Virus record (IMG/VR): IMGVR_UViG_3300005977_000041 | Location: 1-10,513 of that record | Strand: one strand, 5' to 3' | DNA length: 10,513 nt | Shown here: one piece after another, positions 3,075 to 10,513 of the stretch | How the letters are laid out: every line of letters starts with the position of its first letter | Numbering within the stretch: the stretch's first letter is position 1 | Position numbers and translations under genes: made by a program | The notes under the pieces: model-generated | Database searches by the model: none | Seen by the model: only the letters and a program-made list of their open reading frames with translations | What the model was told of the DNA's origin: nothing

Positions 3075-3392
3075 ATGAGTGATTTTGCAAAATATGAGTG
3101 TAGAAAATATACAGTTCAAATTTTTAAATGGTTGAAAAGTCGTTATCCTGACAATGTTTATGATTTTCTAGTTTTAGAAGATGAGAACTTAGTAACTATA
3201 AAAATTATAATGAATGTAACAATAAAATTTTATGAAAAAAGAGGTCTAGGAATTGTAAATTATATAATTAAAACTTTTAGACGTCCAGAATTAATAAAAA
3301 TAAATTGGAGATATAATAGAAATATGTTTAATATTGTTGTCTTTTGTGACGAAGTTAGTAAGAGTATAAATTTGTCAGAAAACGAAAAATAA
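3075..3392 (+). CDS. Hypothetical protein (105 aa)
   Basis: ORF track; TATA-TGTCA promoter at leaderless spacing. Confidence 0.8.
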   Translation: MSDFAKYECRKYTVQIFKWLKSRYPDNVYDFLVLEDENLVTIKIIMNVTIKFYEKRGLGIVNYIIKTFRRPELIKINWRYNRNMFNIVVFCDEVSKSINLSENEK

Positions 3393-3404
3393 GAATGATA
3401 AAGT

Positions 3405-3680
3405 ATGGGCAAATTAGCTTTTAGGTTATATATTTCTATAATGCTTTCAATTGTAATACTTAATATACTTTTAATATTTTCTGAAGGAATTTTATCTAAA
3501 AATCTACAAAATATAGTTTTATATTCCGCAATTACATCAATTTTATTAGCAATAATTTTCACATGGATAATAGATTTGATAGATGATTTAGATACAAGAA
3601 TTAATAAACTTGAACTAGAAATTGAAAGATTAAAAAGAGAAAGAAGACAAGAAATATATATGTCAGATAACGAAAAATAA
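3405..3680 (+). CDS. Two-TM membrane protein with C-terminal coiled coil (paralog 1, 91 aa)
   Basis: Two hydrophobic helices then DTRINKLELEIERLKR. Confidence 0.85.
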   Translation: MGKLAFRLYISIMLSIVILNILLIFSEGILSKNLQNIVLYSAITSILLAIIFTWIIDLIDDLDTRINKLELEIERLKRERRQEIYMSDNEK

Positions 3681-3692
3681 AGATGAGAAAAA

Positions 3693-3935
3693 ATGGAAAG
3701 AGAATTTCGTGAAATAATAGTTTTCTTAATTTTTTTAGCTTTAATGTCTTTAGCTTTAATAGTCATGTCATTAGGAATTCTTGTAAAAAATATGCCAATA
3801 GTTATAATATCAACATTTTTTGCATCTGGAATTTTTGCAATTATATATGTAGCAATTTATGATATCTTTGCAGATATTTATGATGAAATTGATGAACTTA
3901 AAGCAGAAATTGAAAGATTAAAAAGAAAGAAATGA
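3693..3935 (+). CDS. Two-TM membrane protein with C-terminal coiled coil (paralog 2, 80 aa)
   Basis: Two hydrophobic helices then YDEIDELKAEIERLKR; colinear with paralog 1. Confidence 0.85.
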   Translation: MEREFREIIVFLIFLALMSLALIVMSLGILVKNMPIVIISTFFASGIFAIIYVAIYDIFADIYDEIDELKAEIERLKRKK

Positions 3936-4005
3936 CTAGAAATATATTTGTAAAAAAATGAAAAATAAAAAAATATTTTTTGCTTAATTTTCTCTTTTAT
4001 TTTTA

Positions 4006-5087: not shown

Positions 5088-5100
5088 ATATGCAATTGAA

Positions 5101-5130
5101 AATCTGACATTTAAATGTATATGTCATCTT
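5101..5130. promoter_or_regulatory. Bidirectional promoter with inverted repeat TGACAT-N10-ATGTCA
   Basis: TGACAT 5105-5110, ATGTCA 5121-5126; palindrome ACATTTAAATGT 5107-5118. Confidence 0.7.
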
Positions 5131-5158
5131 TTTATAGTATTCTGAAATATCTAAAATT

Positions 5159-5431
5159 ATGAAAAAGCAAAGAAATAAGTATATCGAATTAAGAATACCT
5201 GCAAGGTATAAAAATCTTTTTTATGAGAAAAGAGAGACAATAAAACAAGAGATTGACAGAATTCTAAATGAAGAAAAAGAATTCAAAGAAATTGAAAGTA
5301 ACGAAATTTATGATGAGCGTGTTTTTTTTACTGTCGATGAATTATATTATCACAAACTTGAAGAATTAGCAAATAAATACAACATGAAAATATCTAAATT
5401 AATAAGATCTATATTCTTTAAGTTAATTTAA
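5159..5431 (+). CDS. Putative RHH-type DNA-binding protein (90 aa), possibly two fused RHH-like units
   Basis: C-terminal RVFFTVDELYYHKLEELANKYNMKISKLIRSIF has beta-alpha-alpha RHH pattern; N-terminal YIELRIP resembles a second beta strand. Confidence 0.7.
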   Translation: MKKQRNKYIELRIPARYKNLFYEKRETIKQEIDRILNEEKEFKEIESNEIYDERVFFTVDELYYHKLEELANKYNMKISKLIRSIFFKLI

Positions 5432-8208: not shown

Positions 8209-8400
8209 ATGATAGATTATGATGAAATAATAACAGATCTTGAAGATGCAATAAAAGAATTACAAAATGCAAAAGAAAAATTAGAAGAAATTATGAAACT
8301 TATTGAAAACTATGAAGAACATAATTTTGAAAAAGAAAAAATTGAAGAAATAGAAGATATTATTTATGAGATAGAAAATTTAATTAGAGAATTAAAATAG
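8209..8400 (+). CDS. Highly acidic coiled-coil protein (63 aa)
   Basis: GTGA RBS overlapping the upstream stop; 22 D/E versus 8 K/R by hand count. Confidence 0.75.
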   Translation: MIDYDEIITDLEDAIKELQNAKEKLEEIMKLIENYEEHNFEKEKIEEIEDIIYEIENLIRELK

Positions 8401-8433
8401 AATTAAAAAAAAGAAAAAGCTTAAAGAAAAAAA

Positions 8434-8682
8434 TTATTGTTTTAAGTAAACTCTTTGCTTTGAACGACCGCTTTCCGGATTAAGTTCATAACGAATTTCT
8501 ATCAGCCCTTTTTTCTCTAAATTCTGTAACCTCTTATTGACAACTCCATCGTACTTACTAGCCCACGAAAAATGCCGAATAACTTCATCCTTCCATATTC
8601 CATTTGGAAACTGACTCAAAAAATTCAATACTGCTTTTTCTTTTCTCCCGATTCGAATTTTTTTCTTTTCTGTCTGACTCAT
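8434..8682 (-). CDS. Winged helix-turn-helix DNA-binding protein (82 aa)
   Basis: EKAVLNFL...VNKRLQNLEKKGLIEIRY...GRSKQRVYLK is a wHTH pattern. ATG 8682 preferred because the track's extension runs through the promoter. Confidence 0.85.
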   Translation of the reverse strand: MSQTEKKKIRIGRKEKAVLNFLSQFPNGIWKDEVIRHFSWASKYDGVVNKRLQNLEKKGLIEIRYELNPESGRSKQRVYLKQ

Positions 8683-8729
8683 TTTATCACTAATATCTAA
8701 TATGCAAAAACTTATATTTAAAGTTTTCT
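8682..8729 (-). promoter_or_regulatory. Conserved strong promoter/RBS block, copy 1
   Basis: AGAAAA-C-TTTAAATATAAGTTTTT...AGTGA; 42/48 identical to 9694-9741. Confidence 0.85.
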
Positions 8730-8795
8730 TCAAACTTTTACGTTTTCATTTTACGTTATCTAAATTCCTTCAAATTAGAAATAGTATGACAAACT

Positions 8796-8950
8796 TGAAA
8801 AAAATAAAACAAAAAAATAGAAAATAGAAAGTTAAAACTAAAAAAGAAAAAAATTAACTTTATTTTTGCAAAACATCAAAATAAGAAGCAGAAAAATGTT
8901 ACGTAAAAAATGAAAAAATCGAAAAATAAAAAAGAAAGATAAAATCGACA
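8796..8950 (-). terminator. Long A-rich spacer (U-rich 3' tail of the upstream minus-strand gene)
   Basis: Repeated A4-A7 runs immediately 3' of the stop at 8951. Confidence 0.55.
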
Positions 8951-9331
8951 TTACTCTTTAATTAAATCAATTGGATAATGTTTTTTCAAAATATAATATA
9001 ATTTGAAAAATATCGGCTCAGCATAATCAATATTTGATTCTGGTAATTTTTTCAAAATGTTAATAATATCTTCCGAAACATCGTATTCTTTAAAATATCT
9101 TAATTTTAAAACATTTTTGATAATTGAATAATCGTAAAAATAATATGCTTTATTATTTAAAACAAGAAGACATTTATATCCATTACTATCAGGAAAACTA
9201 GTAATATATTTTGTTTCATAATCAGAAACAAAAATTATAGCATTAATTAAATGATCATCTGTAATCTTTCTTAATTTTTCAAAAGTATTTTTTATATCTT
9301 CATCATATATTTGAACTTTATTTTCACTCAT
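8951..9331 (-). CDS. Hypothetical protein (126 aa)
   Basis: ATG 9331 preceded by GGAGG and a TTTATA-TTTGTCA promoter; the track's TTG start at 9352 is less likely. Confidence 0.8.
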   Translation of the reverse strand: MSENKVQIYDEDIKNTFEKLRKITDDHLINAIIFVSDYETKYITSFPDSNGYKCLLVLNNKAYYFYDYSIIKNVLKLRYFKEYDVSEDIINILKKLPESNIDYAEPIFFKLYYILKKHYPIDLIKE

Positions 9332-9435
9332 TTTCTTTCCTCCAAAAAACAACTAACTAGATATGACAAATATAAAAACATCTTTGGCTTTCAGTTTCAA
9401 AATTTCTTAAAATGGCAGAATTATTATTTGAAATT

Positions 9436-9523
9436 TGAAAAAAATTATTGATAAAAATAGATAATAAAGACAACAAAAATATAAAAATAAAAGAAAAAAT
9501 TGAAAATTAAAAAAAGAATAACT
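9436..9523 (-). terminator. A-rich spacer (U-rich 3' tail of the Gp1-like gene)
   Basis: A-runs 3' of the stop at 9524. Confidence 0.5.
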
Positions 9524-9691
9524 TTACCAACAATCAGACATATACTTCTTGACTTTTTTCTCACTAATTCCTAAAAATTGAGCTATTTGTTGAATTGAAT
9601 AACCTTGTTTTATTAATTGATGAACTAACGAAACTTCATCATCTCTTGAACTTATATAATATCTTGAATTTCCGACTTGTACGACTTTCAT
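9524..9691 (-). CDS. Rudivirus Gp1-like HTH DNA-binding protein (55 aa; SIRV1 ORF55/56a, SIRV2 ORF83 family), not in ORF track
   Basis: Manual translation MKVVQVGNSRYYISSRDDEVSLVHQLIKQGYSIQQIAQFLGISEKKVKKYMSDCW; QV...RYY..S.DD.VS..H.L.K.GY..QQIA..LG.SE.KV..Y...C signature; strong promoter and GGTGA RBS. Confidence 0.92.
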   Translation of the reverse strand: MKVVQVGNSRYYISSRDDEVSLVHQLIKQGYSIQQIAQFLGISEKKVKKYMSDCW

Positions 9692-9693
9692 CT

Positions 9694-9741
9694 TTTTATC
9701 ACCAATATAACATATGTAAAAACTTATATTTAAACTTTTCT
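9694..9741 (-). promoter_or_regulatory. Conserved strong promoter/RBS block, copy 2
   Basis: AGAAAA-G-TTTAAATATAAGTTTTTACATATG...TTGGTGA. Confidence 0.85.
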
Positions 9742-9831
9742 CTCTCTTTTTATCTTTTGATTTTTCGAAACTTTTAACGTTAAACCTCTTAACTTACAAT
9801 TTCTGTTAACTTTGAAATTTGATTTGAAAAC

Positions 9832-9965
9832 TGAAAAAAATTAAACATAGAAATAGAAAATAATGAGAATAAAACTAAAAAGCTAAAAAATAAAATTATA
9901 AAACTAGAAAAATAGAAAATATAAAATAGAAGATAATAAAAATAAAAATAAAAAAAACAATTAAC
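9832..9965 (-). terminator. Long A-rich spacer with AAAATA(G)/AAAACTA short repeats
   Basis: About 130 nt almost entirely A-runs, 3' of the stop at 9966. Confidence 0.55.
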
Positions 9966-10304
9966 TTACATTATTTGCATGCTTTTCCAGCCAACAGGGT
10001 AACTAAAAACGTATACTATTTGTTGTTTTTGACTTTGTGAATTATATTTAATTCTTTCTTCAATCAACACTATTATTGTATCGCTTTTTGGAATAATCGC
10101 ATATTCAAATTCTCTAGTTTCATCATTAATGTCATTAGTACTCATTAATATCAATTCATATTCACCATAAACTTGTCTAATCTTTATATACCCATCTCTT
10201 CCTCTGTACTCCTTAACTATCAAAAAATATTTGGACTCATCTTTGCCTTCATCAATCGCCTTCTTTATTAATTCACTGATTTGTTCATCAGTTAAGTTTT
10301 TCAT
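9966..10304 (-). CDS. Hypothetical protein (112 aa), candidate early gene
   Basis: ORF track; GGTGA RBS and promoter block copy 3. Confidence 0.85.
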   Translation of the reverse strand: MKNLTDEQISELIKKAIDEGKDESKYFLIVKEYRGRDGYIKIRQVYGEYELILMSTNDINDETREFEYAIIPKSDTIIVLIEERIKYNSQSQKQQIVYVFSYPVGWKSMQIM

Positions 10305-10308
10305 CTTT

Positions 10309-10353
10309 TCACCAATTTTACATATGTATCTCCCCCTTTATAAAGTTTTCTCT
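10309..10353 (-). promoter_or_regulatory. Conserved strong promoter/RBS block, copy 3 (diverged middle)
   Basis: Ungapped alignment with 9699-9743: AGAGAAAA-C-TTTATA...TACATATG...ATTGGTGA. Confidence 0.75.
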
Positions 10354-10363
10354 ACTTTTTTAC

Positions 10364-10407
10364 ATCTCTATCTCTCTATCTCTCTCCATTAACTCTCTCT
10401 ATAGAGA
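10364..10407. repeat. TC/TCTCTA simple repeat with palindrome TCTCTATAGAGA (10396-10407)
   Basis: Seen directly in sequence. Confidence 0.6.
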
Positions 10408-10513
10408 ACGTGCAAATTCTGTCTCTCCAATTTCTTTCAACGTTGCAGAGATAAATTGTTTTGGAACGGTGAAATCGCGTAAAAAAACCTATTTCAAACC
10501 TGACTCTAAATTA

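What the first reader, a model, noticed from the sequence alone, without database searches (positions are those of the whole stretch)
8434..10353. Array of monocistronic cassettes sharing one strong promoter block: candidate early anti-defence regulon with its own wHTH regulator
Seen: three unrelated minus-strand genes (wHTH, Gp1-like, 112-aa orphan) carry homologous upstream blocks. 8682-8729 and 9694-9741 are 42/48 identical with a 17-nt perfect core AAAAACTTATATTTAAA; 10309-10353 aligns ungapped with 9699-9743. The block spans BRE, TATA, initiator region and RBS and lacks the TGTCA element of the core genes. Known: rudivirus terminal regions hold early genes, including anti-CRISPRs such as AcrID1, behind conserved strong regulatory sequences. 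Inference: these are co-regulated immediate-early host-takeover or anti-defence genes, and the wHTH may be an Aca-like repressor.
Basis: partly seen in the sequence, partly recalled or inferred. Interest (0 to 1): 0.8.

Follow-up and report, generated by a model that had tools for sequence, protein, structure and literature searches.

The report
Rudivirus early anti-defence promoter cassettes

Summary
Three minus-strand genes carry a shared 51-nt upstream block at 8686-8736, 9698-9748 and 10308-10358. It has a purine-rich BRE, a TATA box, about 20 conserved bases and a GGTGA ribosome site. The 126-aa gene between them uses the ordinary rudiviral TATA+TGTCA promoter instead.

The window is an IMG/VR contig of a Usarudivirus, about 80% identical to SIRV8 and SIRV9 across this terminal region.

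A matrix built from the three blocks alone hits only terminal genes in the complete SIRV2, SIRV4, SIRV8 and SIRV9 records. The SIRV2 hits include the AcrID1 family, gp47 (AcrIA3) and gp01/gp54.

This is the early anti-defence regulatory sequence of Bhoobalan-Chitty et al. 2024 (PMC11065993). Their tables list the SIRV9 orthologues of all three genes as Aca8 (55 aa), ADG.02 (82-aa wHTH) and ADG.05 (112 aa).

The published regulator candidate is the Gp1-like Aca8, not the wHTH, and binding is proven for neither.

New here: the promoter blocks and T-rich spacers are better conserved than the coding sequences, and gene-content differences end at the blocks. No timing or function was tested.

The parts
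10341..10513 (.). ITR-like terminal sequence. The contig stops before the true genome end.
   Evidence: 87% identical to SIRV4 1092-1264, to SIRV4 1341-1513 and to the SIRV4 right end. The window is the whole IMG/VR contig.
10308..10358 (-). Block C, a divergent early-type promoter. It has a purine-rich BRE, TATA TTTATAAA, a G-rich stretch, ACATATGT and an SD GGTGA. The ATG follows 3 nt later.
   Evidence: It is 82% identical to the SIRV9 gp01 promoter.
9966..10304 (-). 112-aa protein of the ADG.05 family, a predicted anti-defence gene of unknown function.
   Evidence: 73% identical to SIRV9 gp01, which PMC11065993 Supp. Data 1 lists as ADG.05. PHROG 10536. No Pfam or PDB match. The AlphaFold2 model is poor, pLDDT 47.
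9749..9965 (-). T-rich spacer: oligo-T terminator tracts after ADG.05, plus sequence upstream of block B.
   Evidence: Six runs of T>=5 within 120 nt of the stop. 9909-9965 is 57/57 identical to SIRV9. It is a member of the A-rich repeat family D2.
9698..9748 (-). Block B, an early-type promoter. It has a purine-rich BRE, TATA TTTAAATA, GTTTTT, ACATATGT and an SD GGTGAT. The ATG follows 6 nt later.
   Evidence: It is 88% identical to the SIRV9 aca8 promoter, while the CDS is 68% identical.
9524..9691 (-). 55-aa HTH protein, an Aca8 (SIRV2 gp01/Gp1) homologue. It is the putative repressor of the early regulon.
   Evidence: 45% identical to the short form of SIRV2 gp01, E 5e-22. PDB 2X48, E 2e-15. 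Pfam HTH_7. The SIRV9 orthologue is listed as Aca8.
9401..9523 (-). T-rich terminator spacer after aca8.
   Evidence: Six runs of T>=5. Repeat family D2.
9358..9382 (-). Ordinary rudiviral promoter (TATA followed by TGTCA, the 'GTC' type) of the 126-aa gene. It is not an early-type block.
   Evidence: The GTC motif is known from Kessler 2004, as cited in PMC5569661.
8951..9331 (-). 126-aa protein of unknown function, embedded in the array but outside the shared-block regulon.
   Evidence: PHROG 12890. 77% identical to SIRV9 gp08, which is absent from the published ADG list.
8737..8950 (-). T-rich spacer: terminator tracts after the 126-aa gene, plus sequence upstream of block A.
   Evidence: Seven runs of T>=5. 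192/214 identical to SIRV9, which is higher than either flanking CDS.
8686..8736 (-). Block A, an early-type promoter. It has a purine-rich BRE, TATA TTTAAATA, GTTTTT, GCATAT and an SD GTGAT. The ATG follows 3 nt later.
   Evidence: It is 78-92% identical to six orthologous promoters, while the CDS is 67-80% identical.
8434..8682 (-). 82-aa minimal winged-helix protein of the ADG.02 family, a second putative DNA-binding regulator.
   Evidence: 73% identical to SIRV9 gp09, which is listed as ADG.02 'putative transcriptional regulator'. AlphaFold2 pLDDT 86.6 with an H-H-H-beta-hairpin layout. Foldseek matches Lrs14 AbfR2, MepR, PadR and Stf76 and the ARV1 regulator.
8401..8433 (-). Convergent terminator spacer between the wHTH gene and the plus-strand 63-aa gene.
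   Evidence: T7, T5 and T8 runs directly after the stop. 32/33 identical to SIRV9.

Best explanation
The three blocks are copies of the rudiviral early anti-defence-gene regulatory sequence.

**How it most likely works.**
- Each block holds a very strong archaeal core promoter: a purine-rich BRE (AGAGAAAAC type) directly upstream of a TTTAAATA or TTTATAAA TATA box.
- About 20 conserved bases and a GGTGA Shine-Dalgarno site follow, 3-6 nt before the ATG.
- Host TBP, TFB and RNA polymerase should load on these promoters as soon as the genome enters the cell. No viral factor is needed.
- The result would be three separate short transcripts, each ended by oligo-T tracts.

**The products.**
- Aca8, the 55-aa HTH protein homologous to SIRV2 Gp1.
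- ADG.02, an 82-aa minimal winged helix.
- ADG.05, a 112-aa protein of unknown fold.

**Shut-off.** Later repression of the set is most plausibly done by Aca8, possibly together with ADG.02, binding in or next to the block.

**The exception.** The 126-aa gene inside the array has the TATA+TGTCA promoter of the core genes and is not part of the set.

**Shown:** the blocks, their significance, their family membership, the protein homologies and the wHTH fold.

**Inferred:** early timing (by homology to SIRV2), monocistronic transcription, repression by either HTH protein, and any anti-defence activity.
For: **Block statistics.** A-B and B-C are the two best of 276 upstream-pair comparisons. The three copies form one repeat family.

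**Matrix scan.** A matrix built from the three blocks alone, at 15 bits or more, gives 9, 8, 6 and 9 hits in the complete SIRV9, SIRV8, SIRV4 and SIRV2 records.
- Every hit lies in the terminal regions of its genome (within about 5 kb of an end).
- All but one are followed within 1-6 nt by the start codon of an ORF.
- No hit lies in a core gene.
- The SIRV2 hits give the same corrected start codons as Supp. Data 1 of PMC11065993 for gp01/54, gp02, gp03, gp08 and gp53.
- They include the AcrID1 family and gp47 (AcrIA3).

**Published description.** The paper describes this motif, its immediate-early expression in SIRV2 and the concept of 'early antidefense regulons'. It lists the SIRV9 orthologues as Aca8, ADG.02 and ADG.05.

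**Protein homologies:**. **wHTH fold:**

**Conservation.** The promoter blocks are 0.82-0.92 identical to most orthologous promoters, against 0.67-0.80 for the coding sequences.

**Terminators.** Oligo-T tracts follow each gene.
Against: - There are no expression data for this virus or for any Usarudivirus. Timing rests entirely on SIRV2.
- Block C differs from A and B across the 10 bases after the TATA box (G-rich instead of AGTTTTT). It may be regulated differently.
- The same BRE/TATA type also occurs at strong host promoters, so part of the similarity could reflect selection for strength alone.
- Binding of Aca8 to the motif has never been shown. A 55-aa form (SIRV1 Gp1) did not bind DNA in an EMSA.
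- No protein in this region is homologous to a validated Acr. The 112-aa protein is unrelated to SIRV2 ORF112.
Confidence: 0.8

Rival explanations
1. The 82-aa wHTH (ADG.02), rather than Aca8, is the repressor that binds the blocks and shuts off the regulon.
For: - It has a genuine winged-helix fold whose nearest structures are DNA-binding repressors.
- It is present in every sequenced Usarudivirus and is always preceded by the motif.
- Its own promoter (A) is the closest relative of the aca8 promoter (B). Both carry the imperfect dyad GAAAAC-N11-GTTTTT around the TATA box.
- In one metagenome-assembled contig it is encoded next to aca8.
- The 55-aa SIRV1 Gp1 did not bind DNA in an EMSA.
Against: - SIRV2 has the same motif and the same early pattern but no ADG.02 homologue (tblastn best E 1.1).
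- ARV1 has ADG.02 but lacks Aca8, and the paper derives a separate motif for it.
- The paper files it as a regulated gene, not as the regulator.
- The protein is a bare wHTH with no visible dimerisation module.
Confidence: 0.25
2. There is no dedicated regulator. The blocks are simply maximal-strength host-type promoters plus a ribosome site, and their similarity reflects convergence on TFB/TBP optima. Early timing follows from promoter strength, and shut-off follows from competition or host factors.
For: - The most invariant positions are in the BRE and the TATA box.
- The paper notes that the same promoter sequence occurs at highly expressed host genes and at the host I-A cas promoter.
- The ACATATGT palindrome is complete in only 7 of 35 unique sites, and the dyad around the TATA box appears in 9 of 35.
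Against: - Positions outside the BRE, TATA box and SD are also strongly conserved. G at +4 after the TATA box is present in 31/35 sites, and C in ACATA in 29/35. This holds across Icelandic and Yellowstone viruses.
- The A-B identity of 42/48 extends through non-core positions.
- An HTH gene (aca8) carries the motif in every virus that has it (motif prevalence 1).
Confidence: 0.2
3. The similarity is historical rather than functional. The blocks are copies spread by duplication and recombination of cassettes at the genome ends. They are kept alike by gene conversion, not by selection for co-regulation.
For: - Non-coding flanks are more alike between viruses than the coding sequences. Spacers are 0.75-1.00 identical in most comparisons and blocks mostly 0.82-0.92, against 0.67-0.80 for the coding sequences, where dS runs from 0.5 to saturation.
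- The window lacks five SIRV9 cassettes, and the right breakpoint lies at the edge of block B.
- The aca8 + 126-aa pair sits at the opposite terminus in SIRV4.
- Block C lies at the edge of ITR-like sequence.
Against: - Recombination does not exclude function.
- The motif sits at a fixed distance from start codons of unrelated genes in viruses from two continents.
- In SIRV2 it tracks early expression.
- Homologues that lack the motif are not early.
Confidence: 0.15
4. The early genes serve replication or host takeover rather than defence inhibition. One example would be Aca8/Gp1 acting through host PCNA and the viral Holliday-junction resolvase.
For: Published interactions of SIRV2 Gp1 with PCNA3 and with the resolvase are cited in PMC5537682. 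No anti-defence activity has been shown for Aca8, ADG.02 or ADG.05. Two of the three products are DNA-binding folds.
Against: The same motif drives the validated Acr genes in SIRV2. The genes are variable and lie at the genome periphery, and in SIRV2 such genes are dispensable in CRISPR-deficient hosts.
Confidence: 0.2

Closest known systems
Early anti-defence-gene (ADG) regulatory sequence of Aca8-encoding rudiviruses (Bhoobalan-Chitty et al. 2024, Nat Commun, PMC11065993)
   Same: - The same BRE + TTTAWATA TATA core with conserved flanks.
- The same placement before single small genes at the genome ends.
- The same three gene families (Aca8, ADG.02, ADG.05), already listed for SIRV4-11.
- A matrix built from the window's blocks recovers the SIRV2 acr promoters.
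   Different: - This contig (IMGVR_UViG_3300005977_000041) was not in their set.
- It is about 80% identical to the nearest isolate across this terminal region.
- Its array is shorter: three motif genes where SIRV9 has about five on the same side.
Orthologous left-terminal region of SIRV9 and SIRV8 (NC_034620, NC_034623)
   Same: Collinear gene order ADG.05 ... Aca8 - 126 aa - ADG.02, followed by convergent core genes. Promoter blocks are 82-88% identical.
   Different: - SIRV9 gp02-gp06 (about 1.95 kb, five genes) are absent from the window.
- Coding sequences are only 67-80% identical, with dN 0.17-0.34, against 0.02-0.07 in core genes.
Bacteriophage acr-aca operons
   Same: A strong early promoter drives small fast-evolving genes, together with an HTH gene that carries the same promoter. 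The proposed logic is a burst of expression followed by repression.
   Different: - Here every gene is its own transcription unit with its own copy of the promoter, rather than one operon.
- No validated acr lies next to the HTH genes.
- No clear inverted-repeat operator is present.
- Repression is unproven.
Rudiviral 'GTC' promoters (Kessler et al. 2004, cited in PMC5569661)
   Same: Virus-specific conserved sequence directly downstream of the TATA box. This type is used by the 126-aa gene and about a dozen other genes in the window.
   Different: The three blocks lack GTC altogether. At the same position they carry AGTTTTT or a G-rich run.

Membership tests
Rudiviral early/ADG regulatory sequence (PMC11065993) | Strong core promoter: a purine-rich BRE directly upstream of a TTTAWATA TATA box | tested here: met
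   A and B have TTTAAATA preceded by GAAGAAAAC and GAGAGAAAAG. C has TTTATAAA, one base off the consensus, preceded by GAGAAAAC.
Rudiviral early/ADG regulatory sequence (PMC11065993) | Sequence around the core promoter is shared among several single genes of the same genome | tested here: met
   A-B 41/48 and B-C 35/48 are the top two of 276 pairs. They form one 77-nt repeat family. A-C alone is not above background.
Rudiviral early/ADG regulatory sequence (PMC11065993) | Precedes single (non-operon) genes near a genome terminus | tested here: met
   Each gene has its own promoter and SD, followed by oligo-T tracts. The region abuts ITR-like sequence.
Rudiviral early/ADG regulatory sequence (PMC11065993) | Matches the motif upstream of validated rudiviral acr genes | tested here: met
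   The matrix from the three blocks scores the SIRV2 gp02, gp03, gp05, gp08, gp52 and gp53 promoters (AcrID1 family) at 18-35 bits, gp47 at 27 bits and gp01/54 at 54 bits. gp48 (AcrIIIB1) reaches only 11 bits.
Rudiviral early/ADG regulatory sequence (PMC11065993) | The authors' numerical criterion (MEME p or RSAT e below 1e-8 against the virus-specific matrix) | not tested
   MEME and RSAT are not available here, and only 10.5 kb of this genome is in hand.
Rudiviral early/ADG regulatory sequence (PMC11065993) | Transcription immediately after infection | not testable with these tools
   It rests on SIRV2 transcriptomes quoted in the paper.
Aca8 (SIRV2 gp01/gp54 family) | A protein of about 55 aa with an HTH motif, homologous to the short form of SIRV2 gp01 | tested here: met
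   45% identity over 53 residues, E 5e-22. PDB 2X48 (SIRV1 variant XX, 55 aa) E 2e-15. Pfam HTH_7 above its cut-off.
Aca8 (SIRV2 gp01/gp54 family) | The gene is itself preceded by the virus's early regulatory sequence | tested here: met
   Block B is the best-scoring copy in the window (59.5 bits).
Aca8 (SIRV2 gp01/gp54 family) | Binds the regulatory sequence and represses it | not testable with these tools
   This is not shown in the literature either. The EMSA in PMC5537682 used the mis-annotated long form and a probe upstream of that long ORF, and the 55-aa SIRV1 form did not bind DNA.
ADG.02 (putative wHTH regulator cluster) | Sequence homology to listed members, a winged-helix fold, and the motif upstream | tested here: met
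   73% identical to SIRV9 gp09. AlphaFold2 pLDDT 86.6 with Foldseek wHTH matches. Block A lies upstream.
ADG.05 cluster | Sequence homology to listed members, and the motif upstream | tested here: met
   73% identical to SIRV9 gp01. Block C lies upstream. The family has 27 representative clusters, all small single-domain proteins.
ADG.05 / ADG.02 as anti-defence proteins | Inhibits a host defence system | not testable with these tools
   No similarity to AcrID1, AcrIIIB1, AcrIA3 or any solved structure. No usable model for ADG.05.
Classical Aca (bacteriophage type) | HTH gene co-transcribed with, or directly adjacent to, a validated acr gene | tested here: not met
   The genes are monocistronic, and none of the neighbours is homologous to a validated Acr.
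Classical Aca (bacteriophage type) | Inverted-repeat operator in the regulated promoter | tested here: inconclusive
   An imperfect GAAAAC-N11-GTTTTT dyad is present in A and B but absent from C. It occurs in 9 of 35 unique sites across viruses. The ACATATGT palindrome occurs in 7 of 35.

The most novel reading that the evidence does not exclude
The 82-aa wHTH (ADG.02) may be a sensor-less copy of the DNA-binding domain of a host CARF-wHTH regulator (Csa3-like).

Made at once from an early promoter, it would sit on the BRE/TATA type that the viral early genes share with the host type I-A cas interference promoter. It would then act both as a transcription-level anti-CRISPR and as the Usarudivirus-specific shut-off switch of the regulon.

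**Lead.** 25 of 30 family members match the C-terminal ~70 positions of ~205-position PADLOC 'CARF3--CARF' profiles (best E 1.9e-5). That is better than their match to any Pfam or NCBIfam wHTH family.

**Against.**
- No Csa3 chain in the PDB is found at E<=10.
- There is no TIGR01884 hit.
- No genomic relative was found.
- That these profiles represent Csa3-like proteins is my inference. I could not check it in the literature.
Probability: 0.08. Interest if true: 0.6.

Novelty: new member of a known kind. Interest (0 to 1): 0.25.

Why it matters
**Limited discovery value.** The concept, the motif and the three gene families were published in 2024 for the same virus genus.

**What the result does show.**
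- A reader working from raw sequence recovered a real regulatory class.
- The published motif transfers to an uncultivated Yellowstone contig.

**Two side results that could sharpen open questions.**
- The non-coding promoter and terminator flanks are better conserved than the genes they frame, and gene-content differences end at the blocks. This fits cassette exchange by recombination at these flanks.
- Aca8 is the only cassette protein shared between the virus genera that share the motif. That is the best comparative argument so far for Aca8 as the regulator. The only biochemical test of the 55-aa form was negative, and the long-form EMSA used a probe upstream of the mis-annotated ORF.

Tried and rejected
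- **ADG.05 structure.** AlphaFold2 on a 20-sequence alignment gave pLDDT 47, so I ran no fold search. Profile searches of the PDB and Pfam, including a deeper 28-sequence alignment, gave nothing significant.
- **ADG.05 against SIRV2 ORF112.** I tested whether the 112-aa protein is related to SIRV2 ORF112 (gp47, AcrIA3), which has the same length. It is not (E 1.4).
- **ACATATGT as a dimer operator.** Rejected as a general feature. It is complete in only 7 of 35 unique sites, and its right half is poorly conserved.
- **A link between ADG.02 and the host activator Sta1.** 12 of 30 members hit the NCBIfam Sta1 model weakly (best E 8.6e-4). MarR, PadR and OmpR-type families score similarly, so this is generic wHTH similarity.
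- **Cellular relatives of ADG.02.** The pattern scan of 185,579 genomes found none.
- **A structured RNA in the blocks or spacers.** Rfam gave no credible match.
- **Small ORFs in the spacers.** Only short, low-complexity ORFs are present.
- **Literature on 'CARF3'.** Two searches and two look-ups by id found nothing usable.
- **The 17-mer alone, with 3 mismatches.** It is not informative in this AT-rich DNA: 4 hits found, 2.8 expected.
Full report
**What the window is.** The 10,513-base window is the whole IMG/VR contig IMGVR_UViG_3300005977_000041. It has 24.6% G+C. Positions 8400-10513 are about 80% identical to the left terminal region of the Yellowstone Sulfolobus islandicus rod-shaped viruses SIRV9 and SIRV8, genus Usarudivirus. 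Core genes such as the major capsid protein, a glycosyltransferase, the Cas4-like nuclease and the 435-aa ATPase-like protein are 86-95% identical to SIRV9. The last about 170 bases (10341-10513) match sequence that SIRV4 carries at both ends and in a tandem duplicate. The right end of the window therefore lies inside ITR-like sequence but does not reach the true terminus.

**The observation.**
- Four minus-strand genes lie between 8434 and 10304.
8682-8729 against 9694-9741 is 42/48 identical, with a 17-nt exact core that occurs exactly twice in the window. 10309-10353 against 9699-9743 is 33/45 without gaps.
- The repeat finder returns the three copies on its own as a single 77-nt family.
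- I compared the 80-nt upstream regions of 24 genes, 276 pairs. A-B (41/48) and B-C (35/48) rank first and second. The median is 25 and the largest shuffle value is 32. A-C (30/48) is not above background, so C is a divergent variant.
- In the direction of transcription each block reads as follows: a purine-rich BRE, a TATA box (TTTAAATA in A and B, TTTATAAA in C), about 20 bases including ACATATG, a GGTGA-type Shine-Dalgarno site, and the ATG 3-6 nt later.
- None of the blocks contains TGTCA or GTC. A TATA box followed by TGTCA precedes about a dozen other genes in the window, including the 126-aa gene that sits between the cassettes. This is the known rudiviral 'GTC' element of Kessler et al. 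2004, cited in PMC5569661.
- Each of the four genes is followed by five to seven runs of at least five T within 120 nt. The T fraction there is 0.60-0.69, against 0.40 for the strand as a whole. By established knowledge of archaeal termination this fits separate transcription units.

- I built a 51-position matrix from the three window blocks only and scanned complete genome records.
- At 15 bits or more it gives 9 hits in SIRV9, 8 in SIRV8, 6 in SIRV4 and 9 in SIRV2.
- Every hit lies in the terminal regions of its genome (within about 5 kb of an end). All but one are followed within 1-6 nt by the start codon of an ORF. None lies in a core gene.
- In SIRV2 the hits are upstream of gp01/gp54, gp02, gp03, gp05, gp08, gp52, gp53 and gp47.
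- For gp01/54, gp02, gp03, gp08 and gp53 the implied start codons are the amended ones printed in Supplementary Data 1 of Bhoobalan-Chitty et al. 2024.
- gp02, 03, 05, 08, 52 and 53 are the AcrID1 family. gp47 is AcrIA3 (bioRxiv 10.1101/2024.04.02.587611). gp48 (AcrIIIB1) scores only 11 bits.
- Over 35 unique sites the invariant positions are in the BRE (AGAGAAA) and the TATA box. Bases outside the core promoter are also conserved: G four bases after the TATA box in 31/35 sites, the following T run, C of ACATA in 29/35, and the TG at the start of the SD.

**What is already known.** PMC11065993 describes this feature.
- It is a consensus regulatory sequence with a strong BRE and a TTTAWATA box.
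- It precedes small single genes at rudiviral termini and drives immediate-early expression of acrID1, acrIIIB1 and aca8 in SIRV2.
- The authors interpret it as 'early antidefense regulons'.
- They analysed SIRV4-11 individually.
- Their table lists SIRV9 gp07 as Aca8 with a corrected 55-aa start, gp09 as ADG.02 ('putative transcriptional regulator') and gp01 as ADG.05. gp08, the 126-aa homologue, is not listed.

**The window's proteins.**
- The 55-aa protein is 45% identical to the short form of SIRV2 gp01 (E 5e-22). It matches the solved 55-aa SIRV1 protein PDB 2X48 (E 2e-15).
- The 82-aa protein is 73% identical to SIRV9 gp09.
- The 112-aa protein is 73% identical to SIRV9 gp01.

All three genes are thus new alleles of published families, sitting behind the published motif.

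**The wHTH.** Pfam matches for the single sequence fall below threshold. An AlphaFold2 model from a 30-sequence alignment is confident, with pLDDT 86.6. It shows three helices and a beta hairpin. Foldseek places it among Lrs14 (AbfR2), MarR/MepR, PadR, TFE-alpha and Stf76 winged helices, and next to the ARV1 'putative transcriptional regulator'.

**Which protein regulates.** The literature assigns it to the Gp1-like protein.
- Comparative evidence favours Aca8. SIRV2 has the same motif, and of the four cassette proteins it encodes only Aca8 (tblastn E 1.6e-17; the other three have E of at least 0.24).
- aca8 is preceded by the motif in every virus that has the gene.
- Binding is unproven. Peeters et al. 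2017 found non-specific DNA condensation by the 83-aa form, through an N-terminal extension that the 2024 paper regards as an annotation artefact containing the promoter. Their probe lay upstream of that long ORF. The 55-aa SIRV1 form did not bind DNA.
- Promoters A and B, which serve the two HTH genes, are the most similar pair. Both carry an imperfect GAAAAC-N11-GTTTTT dyad around the TATA box. That dyad occurs in 9 of 35 unique sites, nearly all of them aca8 or ADG.02 promoters. This is a hint of autoregulation, not evidence.
- My estimates are about 0.4 for Aca8, 0.25 for ADG.02 and 0.2 for no dedicated viral repressor.

**ADG.05.**
- The family is small: 23 clusters at 90% identity, and 27 representatives among 1.84 billion proteins. 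All members are 107-148 aa.
- G47 and P72 are invariant, and a C-terminal GWKS-like motif is conserved.
- There is no Pfam, NCBIfam, PADLOC or PDB relative.
- The structure prediction failed (pLDDT 47).
- Its function remains a prediction by association.

**Additional findings.**
- Between the window and SIRV9 the cassette coding sequences are 67-80% identical, with dN 0.17-0.34 and dS from 0.5 to saturation. Core genes have dN 0.02-0.07.
- The promoter blocks (0.82-0.88) and the T-rich spacers (0.79-1.00) are more conserved than those coding sequences. For example, 57/57 bases after ADG.05 and 192/214 between the 126-aa gene and block A are identical.
- The same holds in five of six further comparisons for the wHTH cassette.
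- The window lacks SIRV9 918-2868 (gp02-gp06). The right breakpoint lies at the upstream edge of block B, and part of block B is 91% identical to the SIRV9 gp02 promoter.
- In SIRV4 the aca8 + 126-aa pair lies at the other end of the genome.
- Together these points suggest that the repeated promoter and terminator flanks also serve as substrates for cassette gain, loss and exchange. Bautista et al. 2017 had already noted variable genes at SIRV termini and recombination among SIRVs. They did not, in the passages I read, note the conservation of the flanks.

**Verdict.** The regulon interpretation is supported by comparison with validated acr promoters, but it has already been published for this genus. 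The specific claim that the wHTH is the Aca-like repressor is not favoured over Aca8 and remains open. Early timing and anti-defence activity were not and could not be tested here.

Noticed in passing
window 8737-8950, 9401-9523, 9909-9965 and blocks A-C, against L002 (SIRV9), L004, L008-L010, L012: Non-coding spacers and promoter blocks are more conserved between viruses than the cassette coding sequences. Spacers reach up to 57/57 and 192/214 identical, while the coding sequences are 67-80% identical with near-saturated dS.
   Followed up: partly
window 9757-9909 against L002 918-2868: The window lacks five SIRV9 cassettes (gp02-gp06, about 1.95 kb). The right breakpoint lies at the upstream edge of block B. 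In SIRV4 the aca8 + 126-aa pair sits at the opposite terminus. This fits cassette exchange between the repeated promoter blocks.
   Followed up: partly
window 8778-8875, 9418-9515, 9814-9911: A second repeat family of about 98 nt lies in the spacers downstream of three of the genes. It is A-rich on the plus strand and the copies are 62-74% alike. It overlaps the oligo-T terminator tracts.
   Followed up: no
window 9524-9691; L002 2899-3102: RefSeq and PHROG 7067 label the Aca8 homologue 'terminase small subunit', and the SIRV9 record starts it 36 nt too early. Rudiviruses have no terminase, so the label is a generic HTH artefact.
   Followed up: yes
window 8434-8682: The ADG.02 family matches the C-terminal wHTH part of PADLOC 'CARF3--CARF' profiles in 25 of 30 members (best E 1.9e-5). 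It may derive from a CARF-wHTH host regulator. The PDB and NCBIfam searches do not corroborate this.
   Followed up: partly
window 5095-5160: The divergent promoter region between the Rep-like 114-aa gene and the 90-aa gene carries TATA+TGTCA elements on both strands in a near-palindromic arrangement.
   Followed up: no
window 3366-3408, 3599-3681 and 3887-3969: The two adjacent small membrane-protein genes (91 aa and 80 aa) look like tandem paralogues. Their 3' ends and downstream sequence repeat at a 288-nt spacing (82% over 83 nt), as do the promoter regions in front of them (81% over 43 nt).
   Followed up: no
L004 1247-1297, 1496-1546 and 34792-34842: In SIRV4 one identical early-type promoter block occurs three times: twice in a tandem duplication at the left end and once at the right end. 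It drives different genes (ADG.01 and ADG.07), and one copy has no ORF behind it. The inner part of the ITR therefore carries an early promoter.
   Followed up: no
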